From Macrostomum hystrix (Eukaryota; Animalia; Platyhelminthes), in NCBI GenBank assembly GCA_950097015.1, contig CATNEN010000037.1, positions 2,728,001 through 2,792,000 of the forward strand: a DNA stretch of 64,000 bases. The letters are read 5' to 3'. Position 1 is the stretch's first letter. Each line of letters opens with the position of its first letter. Shown piece after piece: positions 2,356 to 12,398 of this stretch. Made by a program: the position numbers and the translations under genes. Under the pieces are notes generated by a model. It ran no database searches, was not told the DNA's origin, and saw only the letters and a program-made list of their open reading frames with translations.

Positions 2356-2867
2356 CATAAGACACCATAGTTAAGATAAGACATTATCAAAGAAAAGAAT
2401 AATGTATTATCTCGCAGAATGAATACGTTATTCGCAGAAGCGTTTCTAGATTTAGCTAAAATCGAGTGACATTATTGCATAGCTACTGATATAAGCTATA
2501 CTAAATGTAGCACTGCCGTGTCCTGAGTAGCTAACGGATAAATTGAAAATAGTTTTAAATGGGACAATTCAAACCTGAATTGCGTCTGTTTCGCAACCTA
2601 ATAGTTGAATTTTCCAGTCGGCTTCCCACTCGGGTTTCATTCTGCTTTTGCCTTTGTTTTAATTGCTCAGTTTTTCAGATACTGTTAAAAAAATTAGTAT
2701 AATCTGCAGCCCTACCTTCACCTGAAAGCGAAACTGAAAAACTACTTCACTAAAACAAAAACACCTGAAAAAACTGCTTTTTTAGAAACAAGAACCACAG
2801 AAGCCAAATGACTCGCTGAAAATGAAATCCCACGGAAGACCCACCACCAGAATACAAATAACGCAAG

Positions 2868-3320
2868 GAAGTCAGGAAAAACCCAAGGGAGTCAGGGATA
2901 AACCCAAGGCAATCAGGAAAACCAAGGGTGTTAGGAATAAACCCAAGGGAGTCAGGGATAAACCCAAGGGAGTCAGGGATAAACCCAAGGCAGTCAGGGA
3001 TAAACCCAAGGCAGTCAGGGATAAACCCAACGGAGTCAGGAAAACTCAAGGTATTGCTAGAAAACTCAAGGGATTTCTGGAAAACCCAAGGGAGTCCTGG
3101 AAAACCCAAGGGAGTCCTGGAAAACCCAAGGGAGTCCTGGAAAACCCAAGGGAGTCCTGGAAAACCCAAGGGAGTCCTGGAAAACCCAAGGGAGTCCTGG
3201 AAAGCCCAAGGGAGTCAAGGATAAACCCAAGGGAGTCCTGGAAAACCCAAGGGAGTCCTGGAAAGCCCAAGGGAGTCAAGGATAAACCCAAGGGAGTGCT
3301 GGAAAACCCAAGGAAATCCG
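2868..3320. repeat. Compound minisatellite, 21-bp AAACCCAAGGGAGTCAGGGAT and 20-bp AAACCCAAGGGAGTCCTGGA units
   Basis: Tandem copies; explains spurious ORFs at 2750-3415. Confidence 0.93.
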
Positions 3321-3884
3321 TTGGTTTCCAAGGAAAAACGAACGGGCTCACAAATTTAAATTTTTGTAAGTTGGCGCGTTTGGTTTCTGCTGTTAGAAGT
3401 TTTTCAAGAAAGTGACCATCATACTACAGATAAAAAATTAATCGAACATTTATCTTAAGAAGTCATTAGAATTACAGAAATGCAACAACCCGCTTATGGG
3501 CCAATGCTTGAAATAATTTAGGTCATGCGTTAAAATGCAAGCCAAAGAATAATATCAATTGGATTGTCAAGGACGAAAAGGTTATTGATTTGCTGTCAGG
3601 CTCTGTATTGATTTAAGCGAACCAGTCCGATGGACTTCAGTTCTGCAAAGCAACTGAATTGATAATTCGAAATTCGCAACAACTAGAAGCAGTGCAAAAA
3701 TAAAAGAATGGAAATTTAACTTTTCCGAAACCGCTTTTAAAATTAAATTTTCGTATTCTGCGCTACTATGGAGTCAGTAGTACATTGCAGGCACGTAAGT
3801 TTTTTCTTTGAATAAAATTATAGCTCTTTTCAGAGTTATGATAGCCGATAATGCTGGTCACAAACAATAATATTGCTTTTGTCG

Positions 3885-3896
3885 CGCAATGTGGAC
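3885..3896. repeat. Target-site duplication of the LINE, copy at the element 3' end (CGCAATGTGGAC)
   Basis: Identical 12-mer at 10175-10186; flanking bases differ on both sides. Confidence 0.93.
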
Positions 3897-4221
3897 TTGA
3901 CTTACTTGACTTAGCTGCAGGGGGCATCTTCCGGATGCAGCGGGGAGGCGTTGCCGCCCATTCCGCTAGCCCCTGGCGACCACGGGCAACTAGAGCTGCG
4001 GTGTCGCGCAGGGGGATCCGGTGGTGCCGGCGTCCGCAGCGCGGTCCTCCTCCGGAGTGTCCAGGAGGTGGAGGGTTGCTCGCCCGGTGGCCCTCAGGTA
4101 TCGGACGAGCTGGCAGATGTTCTCAGGCCTGAAAACGTCGGGGAGATCCGGGTTTGGGCCGAGATAGGTGAGCCGGTCCTGAGTGAAGGCGGGGCAGTCG
4201 CAAATAAAATGCTCTGCATCC

Positions 4222-7200
4222 TCAATGGCAGAGGCAGAAGGGGCATTCCTCACTGCGGATTTTGCCTTGCAGGAAGCGGTGCCTGGCGAAACAGCCATGG
4301 CCAGAGAGGGCCATGGTGACTGCCCTGATGTCCTTGCGGTTCAGTCCAAGCAAGGCTTTGCGAAGGGCAGTGGAGGGACAAGGGACAGCAGCGCGAGACT
4401 GCCGACAATCGGCGGTATTGATCCATCTGTCCTTGTGCTTTGAGGTCACCCACTGGTTAATCCGAGTGTTGACGACGGCGGTAGGGGTGGAGACCGCAGG
4501 CACGGGGCCAAAAAGCGAACCCGTCGAACCGGCCTTGGCGAGGCTGTCGGCCAATTCGTTACCAGGGTGGCCAGAGTGCCCTGGAATCCACCTTAGGGAC
4601 ACCTTGTTGTGGGTCCCTAAGCGGTTGAGTTGCGCGACGCAGTCAAGGACTGTGCGCGAGCAGGTGTGCGTGCGTCCAAGGGCATGGATCGCCGCCTGGC
4701 TGTCCGAGTGGAGGAAGATTTCTGCTCCATGGACGTTTTGGTAGATCAGCTCCAGGGCGCAGGAGCTGATGGCCAGAACTTCGTTCTGGAAAACAGTAGA
4801 GTTTATGCCGGTGTGCTGGGAGAAGGTCGCCACAGTTTTCCCTCCGGACATAATGCAGTAGCCGAAACCAGAGACCGAGTTGATTTGCGATCCGTCGGTG
4901 AAGCAGTGAATTTCACGGGGTTGGCCGTGGTCACGTACTTCCTGGCGAGGCGGAATGCTGGTTTTGAATTTTTGCGGTGGGCACAGCGTCGACGGGATTC
5001 CGTCGGAGAGAATTTTGAGACCTCCTGCTGCGTCCAGGTCCCGTAGGCTGAGGTCGCCATGGGGCTGGAGGTTCCGCTTGCTGAAAGCAAGTTGCTTCCG
5101 GATGGAGATACCCGCGTCCAGAAGACGACGAGCCGTCTTCATCGCCTCCCCCTTGATAAAAAGATCTAAAGGGGGAAGGTCCAGGAAGGCATTCATGCCA
5201 GCGAAGGGAGTGGAGGGTGCCGCACTCATGATGGCTCGACAAGCACGGCCCTGCACCTTGTTTAGGGCCTCCAGGACCCCTTTGGTCTCCAGGGCACTAT
5301 TCCAGATGAAGCCGGCAAAAGAGATGGCCGGTCTTACAATGGTAGTGTAAATCCACCAGAGACGGCGGGGGGTGAGGCCCCAGGTGGCGCCGAAGGCTCT
5401 GCGAATCTGCGCGAGCGTCGCAAGAGCTTTACGGGTTTTGAATTTGACGTGAGGTGTCCAGCTCAACCTGTGGTCGAGGATGACACCTAAGCATCTGGTT
5501 TGCTTCTCCATGGCGATTGGTTTGTTATAGAGAAGGAGAGGCTCAATCCTCCAGTTTCGTTTGCTGGTGAACATAATGGCGACGGTCTTGGACTCAGAGA
5601 GTTTGAGGCCGCAGCCATTGGCCCAGCGTTCGGCACGGTGGATGAAAGCTTGCAGAAGGTCTCTAAGGACCGGGGGAGACGGTCCGGCCACGGTGGCGGT
5701 GACGTCGTCAGCATAGCCGATTTTTTGGACCGGGTCCGGGTCAGGGCTGCAGAGCAGTTCGTCCATGACAAGGTTCCAAAGGATCGGACTGAGAACGCCA
5801 CCCTGCGGGCCTCCCTTCTGGACATTCACAGAACGGGAGTGTCCAAGCAGGTGCGAGGTGGCAGTTCGGTGAGAGATCATATACATGATCCAGCGGGTGA
5901 GGTGCTCGTGCGTAGCCCGGCGTTCCAGGGCTCGCCTAAAGGCTCCGAAGAGCACATTGTCGAAGGCACCATCAATGTCGAGGAAAAGCGAGAGAGCAAA
6001 ACCGGTGCCAAGCACGGCGCGCTCCAGCTTGTCGACAATGGCATGCAGAGCACTTTCGATGGAACGTCCGGATCGAAAGGCGTGCTGGTTGGCGGAGAGC
6101 GGGGAGTTCCTCAGCTCAACGTGAAGGAGGCGCCAAAGAACAAGCCTTTCAAGCAGCTTAAGAAAGAAAGATGTTAAGCTGATGGGGCGGAAGGCTTTGG
6201 CGGAGTGGTAGTCTCCCTTCCCAGGTTTGGGGATGAAGACGATAGTGGCTTCCTGCCAAGACCTGGGTACGTACCCGAGGGTGATACAGGCCTTGAACAG
6301 GTTGCAAAGGAGGCCGAGGAACCTGTCATTTTTTACCGCTTCATGTAGGAAGGCGGGGTAAATGTTGTCAGGTCCAGGCGACTTAAAAGGCGAGAAGGAG
6401 TTAGCAGCGCGAGCTGTCCGTTCTCTAGTGATAATAGTTGTCGCAAGGATGTGTCCACCCGGAGTGTGGTCCGGCGGGTCCTGAAGCGGCGCAGTCTGGG
6501 GGAAGGCGCTGGCGAGCATGATGTCCAGCGATTCGCCAGGATTCTCAGCAAGCCGGCCGTCCGGTCTTTTGATCACTGAGAGCTTCGACATTTTGTCAAG
6601 AGTGAGCGCTTTTACAACGCGAGAAGTTGGGCGGGCGCCCTCCAGCTCGGAGCAGTATTGGCGCCACTTTTCGGACTTCGCTTTCCTGGTGTCACGCTTA
6701 AAGTCACGAATCGCATTCTGGTAGGCGGTCAGGTCAGCTGGGTCCTTGCTTTTCCGCGCAATCCGCTGGAGGGATTTGGCCTTTCGCCGGAGGGTTCCAA
6801 GCGCTGGGTTCCACCAGGGAGCGGATTTTTTGCCTTTGTAGGCTTTAAGGGGGCAAGAGGTTTCATGAGCTGTCAAGATGGTCATGCTGAGTAGATCAGC
6901 CAGATCGTCCACTTCTTGACAGGTGGCAGGAACAACGGATTCTAACTGGTTGGTCTGGCGCTTCACGGATTCCGCAAAGGCCGTCCAGTCAGTATTCCGG
7001 GCGTTCCTTCTCCACAGAATACCAGGCTTGGAGTAGGAGCTTAGCAACCGGAAACGAATGAAGCGATGGTCAGACAGAGATTCCTCTTCGTCCCACACCT
7101 GCCAGTTCATAATCAGAGGGATCAGGCCCTGAGAGGCGAGGGTGGCGTCAAGGACCTCCGTCCATCGTCCATTGTCAAAGGTGGGTGTGCCACCCGAGTT

Positions 7201-7692
7201 GCAGAACTCAATATTGGTGGTGCAGATGTAGGCAAGGAGATCCTCGCCTCTGCAGTTGGAGGTAACACTGCCCCAGTGGGTGTGGTGGGCATTTATGTCG
7301 CCTGCCACCAGCAGCTCAAAGTCGCGGTCTGAGCAGTAGTCCACGAGGGAAGTGAGACTGGGCGGAACCGCAGGACCGTCACCAGGAATGTATATAGAGG
7401 CGATGATGACGGTGCGGTTCGGGAGAATGTGGTTGGTTTGGATGACACAGAGGTCTTTGTCAGAGAGGTCTGGTCTATACCAAGCTTTTAGATCGGTAGT
7501 CGCGAACACAGCAGCCCTGGGGTTTTGGGGCATGAAAAAACAGTCAAAACCAGCAGGAATGTTCGGAATCTTACCTTTCTTCGTCCAGGGCTCTTGGAGG
7601 AGGATGATGCCCGGTTTTTCGAAGTCCACCACACGCGCCAGGTTGGTCGAGGCCGCGATGCAGTGGTGCAGGTTCAGCTGCAGGAAGCTCAC
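4222..7692 (-). CDS. LINE ORF2 polyprotein: AP endonuclease, reverse transcriptase, RNase H, C-terminal CCHC knuckle (frameshifted tail continues about 4234 to 3990)
   Basis: APE motifs QLNLHH, LLQEPW, GDINAHH..WGS, SDHRFI; RT motifs [37 protein letters not shown]; RNase H motifs [39 protein letters not shown]; CPFC then, in another frame, [13 protein letters not shown]. Confidence 0.97.
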
Positions 7693-7727
7693 CCCAGGAG
7701 GGGCGGTCCGTGCGGCTATCTGCTGAC

Positions 7728-9215
7728 CTACGGCGAGTTGTTCAGGAGCGATTCCTCGTCCTCGCCGGTGTTTTGCCCGAGCTCCATCGGTTCCTCCTGA
7801 ATCGGATCCAGAGTTGAGGCCGGGGCTGCCGCAACAGCGGCGTCCGTGTCCTCAACCCGGTTTTCCGCTGGGGGTTCCGATGAAACATTGGGCCGGGTGG
7901 TGCTGCGGTGGCGTCCACTGTTGGGGTCCGACAGCTGTCTGGCGCGCTGAGTCAAGCCAGCACGGATGGTGTTGCGGGCGGGTTTCCGGCCCTTACCACG
8001 TCCGCCTGTCGTTGCGGCTCGCGCGGCTTTGCCCCTGATAGGGTCCGCATCCTCGGAGTGGTCGTGACGATCAGGAGTCTGTGTTCCAGGGCGCAGGGGC
8101 CCGGCAGAGCTCTGGTTCGTCCGTTTCCGCTTTTCCGGGGGCGGCGGGCGAGTGGCGTCGGACTCGAAGCTGAAAATCTGCATTCGAGTGAGGCCTGCAC
8201 TGATGTAGGACATGTCTGGGCAGCGGAGCATCCAGCTGTCCGACAATCCTAGGATGGCCGTGAAACCGTCTCCACCAGGTCTGGTGATGGTTTCATGAAC
8301 CACGACACCGTTTGCTGGCAGATCCGGGTGGATTGCCAACAGCAGGCGGCGCAGTTCTCCGGCGTTGGTGATGGCGCTGCGAGCTGGAATCCAAACACGA
8401 TGACGGTGTGTCTGGGGGCGCTCGTCCTCCCTGTAGATAAACAGGTTGCCCATTTCCGTGCCCCAGTCGAAGGATTTCAGCATCTCGAGGAGTTGCTGTC
8501 CGGACTGGTTGTCGGCAGGCTGGACAATGAGGGCTTGGTCCTGGATGTCGGTCTTCAGGACGTGCAGTACAGTGCCGCTCAGTGCCAGTTTGACCAGATG
8601 GGAGTCCAATCTGCGCCAGATCTGGTCGAGTTGCGCTGTTGTGAGGGGCGTCTCCTGGCCTCGGATAACCAAGGCCGGCTGCCTCTTTGCCATAGCAGCG
8701 TAAGTGCGCTTTGGCCTTGTGGTTTGGCCGGCGCCTCCCGCAACGGGCCCCCCAGCAGTCGTCGGAGTTTCCGGATGACTGTGAGAGGTTCCGCCGCGAG
8801 AGGAACCGGATGCCCCAGAGGCCTGGGCGGCACTTTTCCGCGCTTCCGGATTTCCCGGACGGCGCGAGGAGTCCGCCTCCTTGTTGGGTGCCGGTTCCTC
8901 CGCGATGTTCGCAGAGTTGCCGGCCCCCTCCTCGGAGGCGGTGGTTGGCGCGGATTTCGCAGCCAACCGTACTTCCTGTTTTCGCCGCCGGAATTCCTGG
9001 AGGCGGGCGAGGCTGCGGGCTTGCGTGGAAGGGGAGCGTTTGCTCTTTGATCCAGCCGCTCTGGTGTTTTCCTGAGTGGCGGAGGAGCAGGATGAATTTT
9101 GGGCGCCGGTGGAACCGGTGTCGCCCTGGCGCTGGTCCTGAGGATCTGCGTCGCCGGCCGGGGTCGGCGTTTCAGCAGGGTCCTGGGACGTGCTGGAGCT
9201 GTAGTGGGACTCCAT
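7728..9215 (-). CDS. LINE ORF1 (495 aa), DUF4780-like core with low-complexity flanks, no CCHC knuckle seen
   Basis: Intact ORF directly upstream of ORF2. HRVWIP and [12 protein letters not shown] resemble the DUF4780 ORF1 domain of LOA-type elements (recalled similarity, not searched). Confidence 0.88.
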
Positions 9216-9221
9216 AGGTCG

Positions 9222-9256
9222 CTGGAAAAAGAGAAAGAAGAGAATAAAAATAAAAA
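9222..9256 (-). promoter_or_regulatory. Strong 3' splice acceptor (polypyrimidine tract plus CAG) 6 nt upstream of the LINE ORF1 ATG
   Basis: Minus strand reads TTTTTATTTTTATTCTCTTCTTTCTCTTTTTCCAG|CGACCT-ATG within an otherwise GC-rich UTR. Confidence 0.7.
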
Positions 9257-9344
9257 CCGCTAATGGCCGGATAGACTCCCCGGACCTTTCAGCCCCTCAG
9301 CGCGGTGAGACCTTAGGCATAAGAGGACACCTAAAGCAGTGCCA

Positions 9345-9900
9345 GGCCCGCAGACTGGCTGCGTACCCTGTTGAGGTCGAAGGGTGACACCTGTCCCTCA
9401 GAGCCGTAGCCAGAGGTACCTGATCACGCACAGGTGCACGAGCGCTGCGGACTGGCCGCATACCCTGTTAAGGTCAAAGGGTGACACCTTTCCCTCAGAG
9501 CCGTAGCCAGAGGCACCTGATCACGCACAGGTGCACGAAAACTGCGGACTGGCCGCATACCCTGTTAAGGTCAAAGGGTGACACCTTTCCCTCAGAGCCG
9601 TAGCCAGAGGTACCTGATCACGCACAGGTGCGCGAGACGCTGCGGACTGGCCGCATACCCTGTCAAGGTCAAAGGGTAACACCTCTCCCTCAGAGCCGTA
9701 GCCAGAGGTACCTGATCACGCACAGGTGCGCGAGACGCTGCGGACTGGCCGCATACCCTGTCAAGGTCAAAGGGTAACACCTCTCCCTCAGAGCCGTAGC
9801 CAGAGGTACCTGATCACGCACAGGTGCACGAAAGCTGCGGACTCGCCGCATACCCTGTTAAGGTCAAAGGGTGACACCTTTCCCTCCAGCCAGGGCTAGA
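9345..9900 (-). repeat. Tandem 97-98 bp monomers (about 5.5 copies) in the LINE 5' UTR
   Basis: TGATCACGCACAGG recurs at 9421, 9518, 9615, 9713, 9811. Confidence 0.96.
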
Positions 9901-10174
9901 GGTACCCAGTTTGGCCAGAGGCCCTGGATGGGTCATCCAGCGCTGTTGCCCATTCTGTCCGGCTGCCCTAGGGTCAGCCTTGAACACTCGCGGGACGTGT
10001 ACCCATGGGTCAGCTGACGGGACAGCGTGGAGGGATCCCTGCACCCGGAGGTACAGGGCTCCTTCCTGCCAGGCCTGCTCAAAAAACGACTGCAGGTGTG
10101 AGGCATCGCAGACCTTAGCCCGTAGGCCTGGTCTGACTCATACCACACAGGCATTGTGTCCCGCCGGTGCGAGC

Positions 10175-10186
10175 CGCAATGTGGAC
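10175..10186. repeat. Target-site duplication of the LINE, copy at the element 5' end (CGCAATGTGGAC)
   Basis: Identical 12-mer at 3885-3896. Confidence 0.93.
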
Positions 10187-10309: not shown

Positions 10310-10500
10310 CTTGTACATGTACATCAGTCAGTAATCAGATGTCATTCAGTACATGTACATCAGTCAGTAATCAGATGTCATTCAGTACATGTACATCAGT
10401 CAGTTATCAAATGTCATTCAGTACATGTACATCAGTCAGTTATCAAATGTCATTCAGTACATGTACATCAGTCAGTTATCAAATATCATTCAGTATCAAA
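10310..10500. repeat. Minisatellite, 36-bp unit TACATGTACATCAGTCAGTAATCAGATGTCATTCAG, about 5 copies
   Basis: Tandem copies. Confidence 0.92.
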
Positions 10501-10838: not shown

Positions 10839-12398
10839 TCACTCAGCCAGCGGCTCCTCGAGGTACACCCGGCGACCGGCCTTCTTCTCGACCGTGTCTA
10901 GAGCGTCGACTCCGTCCAGCCAGGGATTCTTCTTCTCCATCTAAAAGAGAAATTGTTCTGGTTTGCATCTGCGAAAACTGACCCAAGATTTCCCACTCTG
11001 TTCTCACCAATCTCCCAAAATATTCCCCAACTCTCTACTCACTAATCTTCCCAGAGATTCCCCCACTCTGTTCTCATCAATCTTCCCTGAGATTTCCCCA
11101 CTCTGTTCTCAGCAATCTTCCCTGAGATTTCCCCACTCTGTTCTCATCAATCTCCCCTGAGATTTCCCCACTCTGTTCTCATCAATCTCCCCTGAGATTT
11201 CCCCACTTTATTCTCCCCACTTTGTTCCTGAGATTCCACCACTCTGTTCTCACCAATCTCCCCTGAGATTTCCCCACTTTGTTCTCCCCACTTTGTTCCT
11301 GAGATTCCACCACTCTGTTCTCACCAATCTCCCCGAGATTCCCCTGCATTTTCCCATCCGAAATCCCCAAAGCAAGCCAGGCAGCACTGACCACACGGCT
11401 CTGGAAGTTAGCCCGCACGCCTCGCTTGCTGACTGAGTATCTCGGCGACTTCTTGGCGTCCAGTTTGTCGCGCTTGTTGCCCAGCAGGAATGGATTGAGG
11501 TGGCCGCCCATCTGCAATTCAGCGGTGGGAGGTGGTGAATTAATGAGAAGAGGTCGGGGGTTCGAATCTGGGCCTGAAATCCTTATTAAGATCAGTGCAT
11601 CAAATAGGTCATGATTTGCAATGACCCAGGGAAAGCAACCTAACTATAAATTCGGCTCACATTGGCGGCCTTCTTGGAGGTGACGCTAACAGTGCCAGCC
11701 GGGCACTCCATGTGCTCATTGTCGCAGGGGCACTGGCCGGTGGCCATCTTGTGCAGGGCGTCGTTGCGGTTGTACTCGGCCGTGTCGTGGACGGCGCTGT
11801 CGCATGGCGCTGCCAGCTTTGACCGGTCGATGCCAACTGGGCAGGGATTTGGCGGCTCGCAGTAGCTGGGCAGCGAGTCGGTGATGATCTTGGCCTTCTG
11901 CGGCTTATTCTGCGGCCCGGTCACCTGGCCGGGCTCACCGGCGCCGCCGCTGACCTTCTGGGCGCCCCAGATCTTGTTGAGGAAGGGCTCCTCCTCGCGC
12001 CGGGCTGGGATGTCAGGCGAGTCCGAATCGTCCAGTTGATGGCCGAGCAGTTCGTTGAGGTCACCGCGAGTCAGCCGGGGAGCCTCGGCGGCGCCAGTTC
12101 GCTCGAGCAGCTCCGACCAGTAGCGGTCGGCGTCGAAGCCGGTAGGATAGGCGTTGTCGTTGACGTAGTGCCGAGCCTGCAGATCGGTCACGTGACCGTT
12201 CAGCTCGTCCAGGAAGTTGCGCTGGCCCTCAGCCAGGCCGGACAAATAGTCCGAGTGCAGGCGCTGGTTGCGCTTTTCGATGCCGGCCAGGTAGTCACCG
12301 TAGTTGCCGCCGGCGCAGGCGGCCGGCACGATCAGGGCGGCTGCAGCCAGGAGCAGTGTCAGCAGCCCAACTGGGCTGGAATGGTTGAGCAGCTGCAT
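10839..12398 (-). CDS. SCG5: Neuroendocrine protein 7B2 (secretogranin V, PC2 chaperone/inhibitor); exons 12398-11661, 11511-11392, 10940-10839; about 319 aa
   Basis: Signal peptide MQLLNHSSPVGLLTLLLAAAALIVPAACA; family motifs GAQKVSGGAGE, LPSYCEPPNPCPVG, CPCDNEHMECP; CT-peptide motifs NPFLLGNKRDKLDAKK and NPWLDGVDALDTVEKK; phase-0 GT-AG junctions. The exon 2 donor position is less certain. Confidence 0.93.
10980..11345. repeat. Minisatellite, about 35-bp unit CCCTGAGATTTCCCCACTCTGTTCTCATCAATCTC, in 7B2 intron 2
   Basis: Period 35 measured 11085 to 11120. Confidence 0.9.

What the first reader, a model, noticed from the sequence alone, without database searches (positions are those of the whole stretch)
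9345..9900. Tandem 97-98 nt structured-RNA monomers with compensatory changes in the LINE 5' UTR
Seen on the sense (minus) strand: each monomer has (a) a hairpin CCUC-U-GGC[UACG]GCU-CU-GAGG with a cUACGg UNCG tetraloop, which in the 5'-most copy becomes the 7-bp stem CUCUAGC[CCUG]GCUGGAG; (b) ACCCU/AGGGU around an 11-nt loop; (c) UGCGG[CCAGU]CCGCA, which in the 3'-most copy is CGCAG[CCAGU]CUGCG, i.e. two compensatory pair swaps with the loop unchanged; and (d) AGGUGU/GCACCU closing (b) and (c) into a multibranch junction. Loop CCAG could also pair with CUGG in the next hairpin (a). Established: many non-LTR elements carry 5' self-cleaving ribozymes, and some carry monomer promoter arrays. I could not fit this unit to HDV, hammerhead or twister consensus. 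Inference: a possibly undescribed repeated RNA module (ribozyme, ORF1p-binding, translation or splicing control). The covariation rests on very few copies.
Basis: partly seen in the sequence, partly recalled or inferred. Interest (0 to 1): 0.8.

Follow-up and report, generated by a model that had tools for sequence, protein, structure and literature searches.

The report
Repeated RNA hairpin unit in flatworm LINE
A 97-base unit repeated six times in the untranslated leader of a flatworm jumping gene carries two RNA hairpins that evolution has kept paired; it is a duplicated piece of an older single-copy leader, and its function is still unknown.

Summary
The array is real. Six units of 96-98 nt lie at window 9906-9349 on the minus (sense) strand. 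They sit in the 959-nt 5' UTR of a full-length non-LTR retrotransposon, 268 nt below its 5' end.

Across 99 distinct units, hairpin c is 100% paired with 4 of 5 pairs covarying. Hairpin a is 99.4% paired. Elements from other samples carry a single, unrepeated homologous unit with different base pairs in a and c.

Helix b shows no covariation. Helix d is doubtful: in terminal units its 3' strand forms a better-supported hairpin (e) with a downstream partner. The CCAG:CUGG loop pairing fails, because the loop takes 13 forms.

There is no Rfam match, no excess folding stability and no RNA data.

Leader plus units are 92-98% identical among LINE lineages of this genome whose ORFs are only about 70% identical. 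The 5' module therefore appears to have been shared or captured.

Best reading: a conserved cis-acting RNA domain, tandemly duplicated to 2-9 copies, that probably binds a host factor. A DNA-level enhancer role is not excluded, and a ribozyme is unlikely.

The parts
3897..10174 (-). Full-length non-LTR retrotransposon (5' end at 10174, 3' end at a short TAAGTCAAG-type repeat)
   Evidence: The 5' boundary is shared by 27 of 30 genomic copies. Contigs from other samples continue into different flanks at 10174. The 3' end was read.
10175..10186 (.). Target-site duplication, upstream copy (GTCCACATTGCG on the minus strand); the downstream copy is at 3885-3896
   Evidence: Read directly from the sequence. 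The first 2-3 bases overlap the element's 3' repeat, so the TSD is 9-12 bp.
9907..10174 (-). Unique 268-nt leader upstream of the array
   Evidence: It is 95-97% identical among diverged LINE lineages of this genome.
9811..9906 (-). Unit 1 (96 nt), with the variant hairpin a' of 7 continuous pairs
   Evidence: Every lineage in the genome has this variant as its first unit.
9421..9810 (-). Units 2-5, internal (9810-9713, 9712-9615, 9614-9518, 9517-9421)
   Evidence: In unit 4 the helices lie at: a 9610-9590, b 9579-9559, c 9557-9543, d 9586-9581 with 9534-9529.
9349..9420 (-). Terminal unit, ending with hairpin c in the form CGCAG[CCAGU]CUGCG (9363-9349)
   Evidence: The c stem and loop of the terminal unit are lineage-specific, yet always paired.
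9326..9343 (-). Hairpin e (GGCAC / GUGUC).
   Evidence: Alignment A6 of 19 lineages: 92% paired, and 4 of 6 pairs changed on both sides.
9265..9286 (-). Hairpin f in the tether, with the conserved loop GGAGU(A/C)..U
   Evidence: Stems CCGG/CCGG, CUGG/CCAG, CCAG/CUGG and UCCGG/CCGGA in different lineages, read by eye.
9222..9256 (-). Pyrimidine tract followed by CAG, ending 6 nt before the ORF1 ATG
   Evidence: The same layout occurs in all lineages, including L031 and L035. Its function was not tested.
7728..9215 (-). ORF1 (495 aa, no Pfam domain)
4222..7692 (-). ORF2 (endonuclease, reverse transcriptase, RNase H). The C-terminal zinc-knuckle part continues out of frame in 3990-4298

Best explanation
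The 97-nt monomer is a tandem duplicate of an older, single-copy structured segment of the 5' UTR of a flatworm (probably Macrostomum) LINE clade. It is transcribed as part of the sense RNA, because it lies 268 nt downstream of the element's fixed 5' end. On that RNA, hairpin a (just after GGUACC) and hairpin c are under selection to stay paired. Outside the repeat, hairpins e and f are under the same selection. Helix b is only a conserved CCC/GGG complementarity, and helix d is not established. I infer that the unit is a cis-acting binding platform for a host factor that acts on the RNA (translation, stability, export or RNP assembly). Extra copies would add binding sites but are not essential. 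The leader plus units form one 5' module that diverged LINE lineages of this genome have shared or captured by recombination. Shown: the array, its position, the covariation, the single-copy homologues and the module sharing. Inferred: transcription of the units, host-factor binding and any dosage effect.
For: Structure-blind MAFFT alignment of 99 distinct units: 97.2% of cells paired, and 10 pairs changed on both sides against 2.5 +/- 1.0 in shuffles (0 of 500). Slid controls give 2-5. The model-fitted alignment gives the same picture.

Hairpin c is 100% paired. Its stem forms are UGCGG/CCGCA, CGCAG/CUGCG, UGCAG/CUGCA and CAAGG/CCUUG, plus the G.U intermediates CGCGG/CUGCG, UGUGG/CCGCA and UGCGG/CUGCA. 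Its loop takes 13 forms.

Hairpin a keeps pairing in L035 (CCCC..GGC/GCC..GGGG) and in L031 (CUCGC/GCGAG).

RNAalifold, given no structure, recovers a, the core of b, and c.

The sense strand pairs better than the antisense: 97.2 against 89.4% overall, 99.4 against 88.9% for a.

Single-copy homologous units exist in L031 and L035.

Element 5' ends lie at 10174, not inside units.

Leader and units are 92-98% identical between lineages whose ORF1 and ORF2 are 66-73% identical. This points to a host-side rather than an element-encoded partner.

Hairpins e and f covary too.
Against: No RNA data could be obtained. The runs found are contigs that behave like DNA.

Single units fold no better than shuffled sequence, with z from -0.8 to +0.5. 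The MFE fold of a monomer differs from the proposed fold (-28.7 against -27.1 kcal/mol). In the whole UTR the predicted pair probabilities of a, b and c are only 0-0.6.

Most variation among internal units is recent and shared by descent, so independent events are few: about five double changes in c.

An abundant lineage has only two units, so the array length may be neutral.

Nothing identifies the binding partner. A DNA-level role for the same sequence is untested.
Confidence: 0.5

Rival explanations
1. DNA-level promoter or enhancer monomers. The units would be repeated transcription-factor sites of the internal promoter, as in mouse L1Md, and more units would give more transcription. The RNA hairpins would be secondary.
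For: Tandem repeats of variable number (2-9) in a LINE 5' UTR, followed by a non-repeated tether before ORF1. This is the layout described for L1Md (PMC6454616). One 5' module shared by many lineages is what competition for host transcription factors would produce. Unpaired stretches such as GGUACC and CACCUG are strongly conserved.
Against: Element 5' ends lie in the unique leader, not in the units. In L1Md, by contrast, the 5' ends and TSS fall inside monomers. Compensatory changes that keep complementarity while changing the bases are not expected for protein sites on duplex DNA. G.U pairs favour the sense RNA strand. A prolific lineage has only two units.
Confidence: 0.25
2. Only one or two units matter. 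The longer arrays would be neutral by-products of slippage, unequal recombination or template switching between repeats.
For: Relatives have a single unit (L031, L035). Several lineages of this genome have just a first and a terminal unit and are still multi-copy. Some arrays hold runs of identical units, which indicates recent expansion (L017).
Against: The youngest, near-identical copies of the window's own family keep 6-8 units. Disruptive mutations in the a and c stems are rare even in internal units. Recent descent could explain that, however.
Confidence: 0.15
3. Each unit is a small self-cleaving ribozyme of an undescribed class.
For: Ribozymes are known at the 5' ends of several non-LTR families (established knowledge). 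The unit has conserved unpaired stretches next to its stems.
Against: No Rfam family matches at E up to 10 in the window UTR, or up to 1 in L031 and L035. Full-length copies retain the leader and all units, and 5' ends do not pile up at one position inside units. Loop c and the length of loop b vary freely, and L093 lacks b and c altogether.
Confidence: 0.03

Closest known systems
Mouse L1Md 5'-UTR monomer arrays (A, Tf, Gf types)
   Same: Head-to-tail repeats in a LINE 5' UTR, variable copy number between copies, a non-repeated tether before ORF1, and 5' modules exchanged between lineages (PMC6454616; module exchange in L1 is from my own knowledge).
   Different: The units here are 97 nt against about 200 bp. 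They lie downstream of a unique 268-nt leader that holds the element's 5' end, whereas L1Md 5' ends and TSS fall inside monomers. They also carry stems with compensatory changes on the sense strand, which to my knowledge has not been described for L1Md monomers.
L1Tc Pr77 and the HDV-like ribozymes of R2, RTE and related non-LTR elements
   Same: A 5'-terminal segment of a non-LTR element that acts both as DNA (promoter) and as structured RNA (PMC5814959 was listed but not read; the rest is my own knowledge).
   Different: There is no match to any ribozyme model. The units are not at the 5' end. No double pseudoknot is present. The units are repeated.
Retroviral leader hairpins (packaging signal region)
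   Same: A series of short conserved hairpins in an untranslated leader upstream of the first ORF, with a splice-site-like signal between them and the ORF. This is a resemblance from memory only.
   Different: A different class of element, and no evidence here for packaging or for splicing. A search for cis-spliced copies found none.

Membership tests
LINE 5'-UTR promoter monomer array (L1Md type) | Tandem head-to-tail repeats in the 5' UTR, with copy number varying between copies | tested here: met
   5.5 copies by TRF. 2 to 9 units in other copies.
LINE 5'-UTR promoter monomer array (L1Md type) | The array reaches the element's 5' end, and 5' ends / TSS fall inside monomers | tested here: not met
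   27 of 30 copies start at the same base of a unique leader, 268 nt upstream of the array. Contigs from other samples break at 10174 into different flanks. L1Md behaviour is taken from PMC6454616.
LINE 5'-UTR promoter monomer array (L1Md type) | Each monomer has promoter activity | not testable with these tools
   Needs reporter assays or CAGE. No RNA runs were available.
Self-cleaving ribozyme of a retrotransposon 5' UTR (HDV-like, hammerhead, twister and others) | Match to the family's covariance model | tested here: not met
   cmscan against Rfam 15 with permissive filters found no ribozyme family.
Self-cleaving ribozyme of a retrotransposon 5' UTR (HDV-like, hammerhead, twister and others) | Element 5' ends coincide with the cleavage site | tested here: not met
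   5' ends lie at the start of the leader, and all units are retained in full-length copies.
Self-cleaving ribozyme of a retrotransposon 5' UTR (HDV-like, hammerhead, twister and others) | Site-specific cleavage in vitro | not testable with these tools
   Bench assay.
Conserved cis-acting structured RNA element | Helices kept through compensatory changes, beyond controls | tested here: met
   Met for a and c and for e. Not met for b. Inconclusive for d.
Conserved cis-acting structured RNA element | Strand-specific pairing (G.U tolerated on the RNA strand) | tested here: met
   Sense 97.2% against antisense 89.4% paired. The difference is driven by a and d; c is neutral on this test.
Conserved cis-acting structured RNA element | Folding stability above shuffled sequence | tested here: not met
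   z-scores from -0.8 to +0.5. Low pair probabilities in the whole UTR.
Conserved cis-acting structured RNA element | The region is present in the RNA | tested here: inconclusive
   It lies downstream of the fixed 5' end, so it should be in the template RNA of every full-length copy. No RNA reads were available to confirm this.

The most novel reading that the evidence does not exclude
The leader hairpins, including the repeated unit, would mark the full-length RNA as the template for retrotransposition, much as a packaging signal does. The pyrimidine-tract-CAG just before ORF1 would be a spliced-leader acceptor that removes the whole 959-nt, 12-uAUG leader from the RNA that is translated. The element would then separate its mRNA from its genomic RNA in the way retroviruses do, using the host's trans-splicing.
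Probability: 0.08. Interest if true: 0.85.

Novelty: new variant of a known kind. Interest (0 to 1): 0.55.

Why it matters
Repeated 5'-UTR monomers of LINEs have been studied almost only as DNA promoters in mouse. Here a repeat unit carries RNA stems that selection has kept paired across lineages, and an unrepeated ancestor is available for comparison. This gives a clean system for asking whether such monomers work as DNA, as RNA or as both. It also documents one 5' module spreading through many diverged LINE lineages of a single flatworm genome. In addition it defines an RNA motif that has no Rfam family.

Tried and rejected
- Rfam scans of the window UTR and of L031 and L035 gave only sub-threshold noise.
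- A pattern scan of metagenome contigs for the unit returned 12 hits, all chance matches in unrelated sequence.
- Sequencing runs: only Logan contigs of unknown kind were found. They end in different flanks at 10174, so they behave like DNA. No starts, splice joints or expression could be read from them.
- The contig of P0002 had no DNA. L095 has no UTR. L093 lacks b and c.
- I looked for spliced-leader-headed or cis-spliced copies. The ORF1 loci without units are ordinary random 5' truncations. A search for the unit-donor/ORF1-acceptor junction found only one copy, which has a microhomology deletion.
- The CCAG:CUGG loop-to-hairpin pairing is rejected, because loop c varies without any compensation.
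- Pairing of the b loop (GACCUUA) with UAAGGUC in the leader is not kept in L031 (by eye).
- Thermodynamic support was sought and not found.
- The big ORF1 profile search gave only 34 relatives and few usable contigs.

Full report
WHAT IS THERE

On the minus strand of the window, TRF reports a 97-nt repeat at 9353-9886, with 5.5 copies and 94% matches. In register there are six units: 9906-9811, 9810-9713, 9712-9615, 9614-9518, 9517-9421, and a terminal unit at 9420-9349. They lie in the 959-nt 5' UTR of a non-LTR retrotransposon. The UTR is 60% G+C and holds 12 upstream ATGs.

ORF1 is at 7728-9215 and has no Pfam domain. ORF2 is at 4222-7692 and has endonuclease, reverse transcriptase and RNase H domains. 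This copy is full length. The same 12-nt string flanks it at 10186-10175 and 3896-3885. The C-terminal zinc-knuckle part of ORF2 is out of frame in this copy.

The best named protein relatives are from Macrostomum lignano. The 220-Mb genome is therefore probably a Macrostomum flatworm. This is an inference.

POSITION IN THE ELEMENT

The genome holds at least 40 arrays of this kind. In 27 of 30 fetched copies, similarity begins at the same base, 268 nt upstream of the first unit. Contigs from other public samples break at window 10174 into different flanks.

The element therefore starts with a unique leader, and the units lie inside the template RNA. This differs from mouse L1Md, where the 5' ends and TSS fall inside the monomers (PMC6454616). 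Unit number ranges from 2 to 9.

THE STRUCTURE

To avoid circularity I also aligned 99 distinct units with MAFFT alone and projected the structure onto that alignment.

On the MAFFT alignment, 97.2% of cells are paired. Ten pairs changed on both sides, against 2.5 +/- 1.0 in shuffles (0 of 500) and 2-5 in the slid controls.

- Hairpin c is paired in every one of the 99 sequences, and four of its five pairs covary.
- Hairpin a is 99.4% paired.
- Helix b has no compensatory change, and its end pairs break in 11 sequences. Only the CCC/GGG core is nearly constant: each of its pairs breaks in at most one of the 99 units.
- Helix d is 92% paired, but its departures are about as often disruptive as wobble-compatible.
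- RNAalifold, given no structure, returns a, the core of b, and c, but not d.
- The sense strand pairs better than the antisense: 97.2 against 89.4%.

RELATIVES

The strongest evidence comes from elements outside this genome. Two of them carry a single, unrepeated homologous unit: L031 (a Logan contig from another sample; the RT region of its ORF2 is 82% identical in protein) and L035 (a JGI metagenome contig; its ORF1 is 33% identical).

- Hairpin a becomes CUCGC[CUCG]GCGAG in L031 and CCCC..GGC[CACG]GCC..GGGG in L035.
- Hairpin c becomes CAAGG[CUAGC]CCUUG in L031 and UGCAG[CCAGU]CUGCA in L035.

Within the genome, the terminal unit of each lineage has its own c stem and loop: CGCAG with loops CCAGU, GUUAA, AUUAA or UUUUGAA, and G.U intermediates in L055, L071 and L079. 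The stem is never broken. I count about five independent double changes and three wobble singles in c, and no disruptive change. The 5-nt loop, meanwhile, takes 13 forms. This also disposes of the proposed CCAG:CUGG interaction.

HELIX d AGAINST HAIRPIN e

Across 19 lineages aligned with MAFFT, this hairpin e is 92% paired. Four of its six pairs changed on both sides; one of them splits 8:8 between A-U and G-C.

Over the same changes, helix d only moves between U-A and U.G. Hairpin e is therefore the selected helix there, and the multibranch junction is not established. In internal units, d and a shifted version of it (pairing with the next unit) cannot be told apart.

A further hairpin, f, at window 9286-9265, keeps a GGAGUA-type loop and changes its stem by compensation (read by eye). 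The whole leader is a chain of short conserved hairpins. L093 shows the same plan without b and c.

WEAK POINTS

- Single units fold no better than shuffled sequence.
- In the whole UTR the predicted probabilities of a, b and c are 0-0.6.
- No RNA reads were available.
- No Rfam family matches.

MODULE SHARING

Within this genome the leader and units are 92-98% identical between lineages. Their tethers are 72-81% identical, and their ORF1 and ORF2 are 66-73% identical at the DNA level. That is as diverged as L031 and L035 are from the window's element.

Between samples the leader is only 70-81% identical. The near-identity inside the genome is therefore recent sharing, by recombination or conversion, and not extreme constraint. 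The break lies inside the terminal unit, near hairpin c. Lineages with very different ORF1 proteins use the same module, which argues that its partner is a host factor.

READING

The unit is a duplicated piece of an older structured leader. Hairpins a and c are real RNA features.

- I rate a cis-acting, host-factor-binding RNA role as most likely (0.5).
- A DNA-level enhancer role comes next (0.25).
- Neutral expansion of a functional single unit follows (0.15).
- A ribozyme is unlikely (0.03).

A pyrimidine tract plus CAG ends 6 nt before the ORF1 ATG here, and the same layout sits close before the ATG in every lineage. With 12 uATGs in the leader, either trans-splicing or internal initiation seems necessary for translation. 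I found no spliced copies and could not test this further.

Noticed in passing
window 9222-9256 (minus strand); also L031:575-596, L035:505-518, L032, L034: A pyrimidine tract followed by CAG ends 2-8 nt before the ORF1 ATG in every lineage of this LINE clade. It looks like a 3' splice or spliced-leader acceptor. Another reader flagged it (s1-300549). I found no copies headed by a spliced leader and no cis-spliced copies.
   Followed up: partly
G000 loci L048-L092 compared with window 9349-10174: Leader plus units are 92-98% identical among at least eight LINE lineages whose ORF1 and ORF2 are only 66-73% identical in DNA. The 5' module has been shared or captured recently, with the break inside the terminal unit.
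   Followed up: yes
window 9265-9286 and 9326-9343 (minus strand): Two more covarying hairpins lie in the non-repeated tether: e, just before a conserved CCCUCUAAKG motif, and f, with a conserved GGAGUA-type loop.
   Followed up: partly
window 3990-4298 (minus strand): In this copy the C-terminal zinc-knuckle region of ORF2 continues in another reading frame after the stop at 4222, so this copy's ORF2 is not intact at its end.
   Followed up: no
window 9213-10174 (minus strand): There are twelve upstream ATGs in the 959-nt leader. One sits in hairpin c of each of units 1-5 (GUAUGCGG), opening reading frames of 12-54 codons.
   Followed up: partly
window 10313-10495 and 10992-11344: Two unrelated tandem arrays (36 nt x 5.1 and 35 nt x 10.1) lie in the flank just upstream of the element's insertion site.
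   Followed up: no
window 2750-3415: Overlapping ORFs on both strands run through a short-period repeat that encodes reiterated PRESWKTQGSPGKPKGV-like peptides. It is probably a satellite rather than a gene.
   Followed up: no
L033 (G000:C38:22002461-22005515): A leader plus 1.3 units is followed abruptly by unrelated AT-rich sequence. It is either an interrupted copy or a solo 5' module.
   Followed up: no
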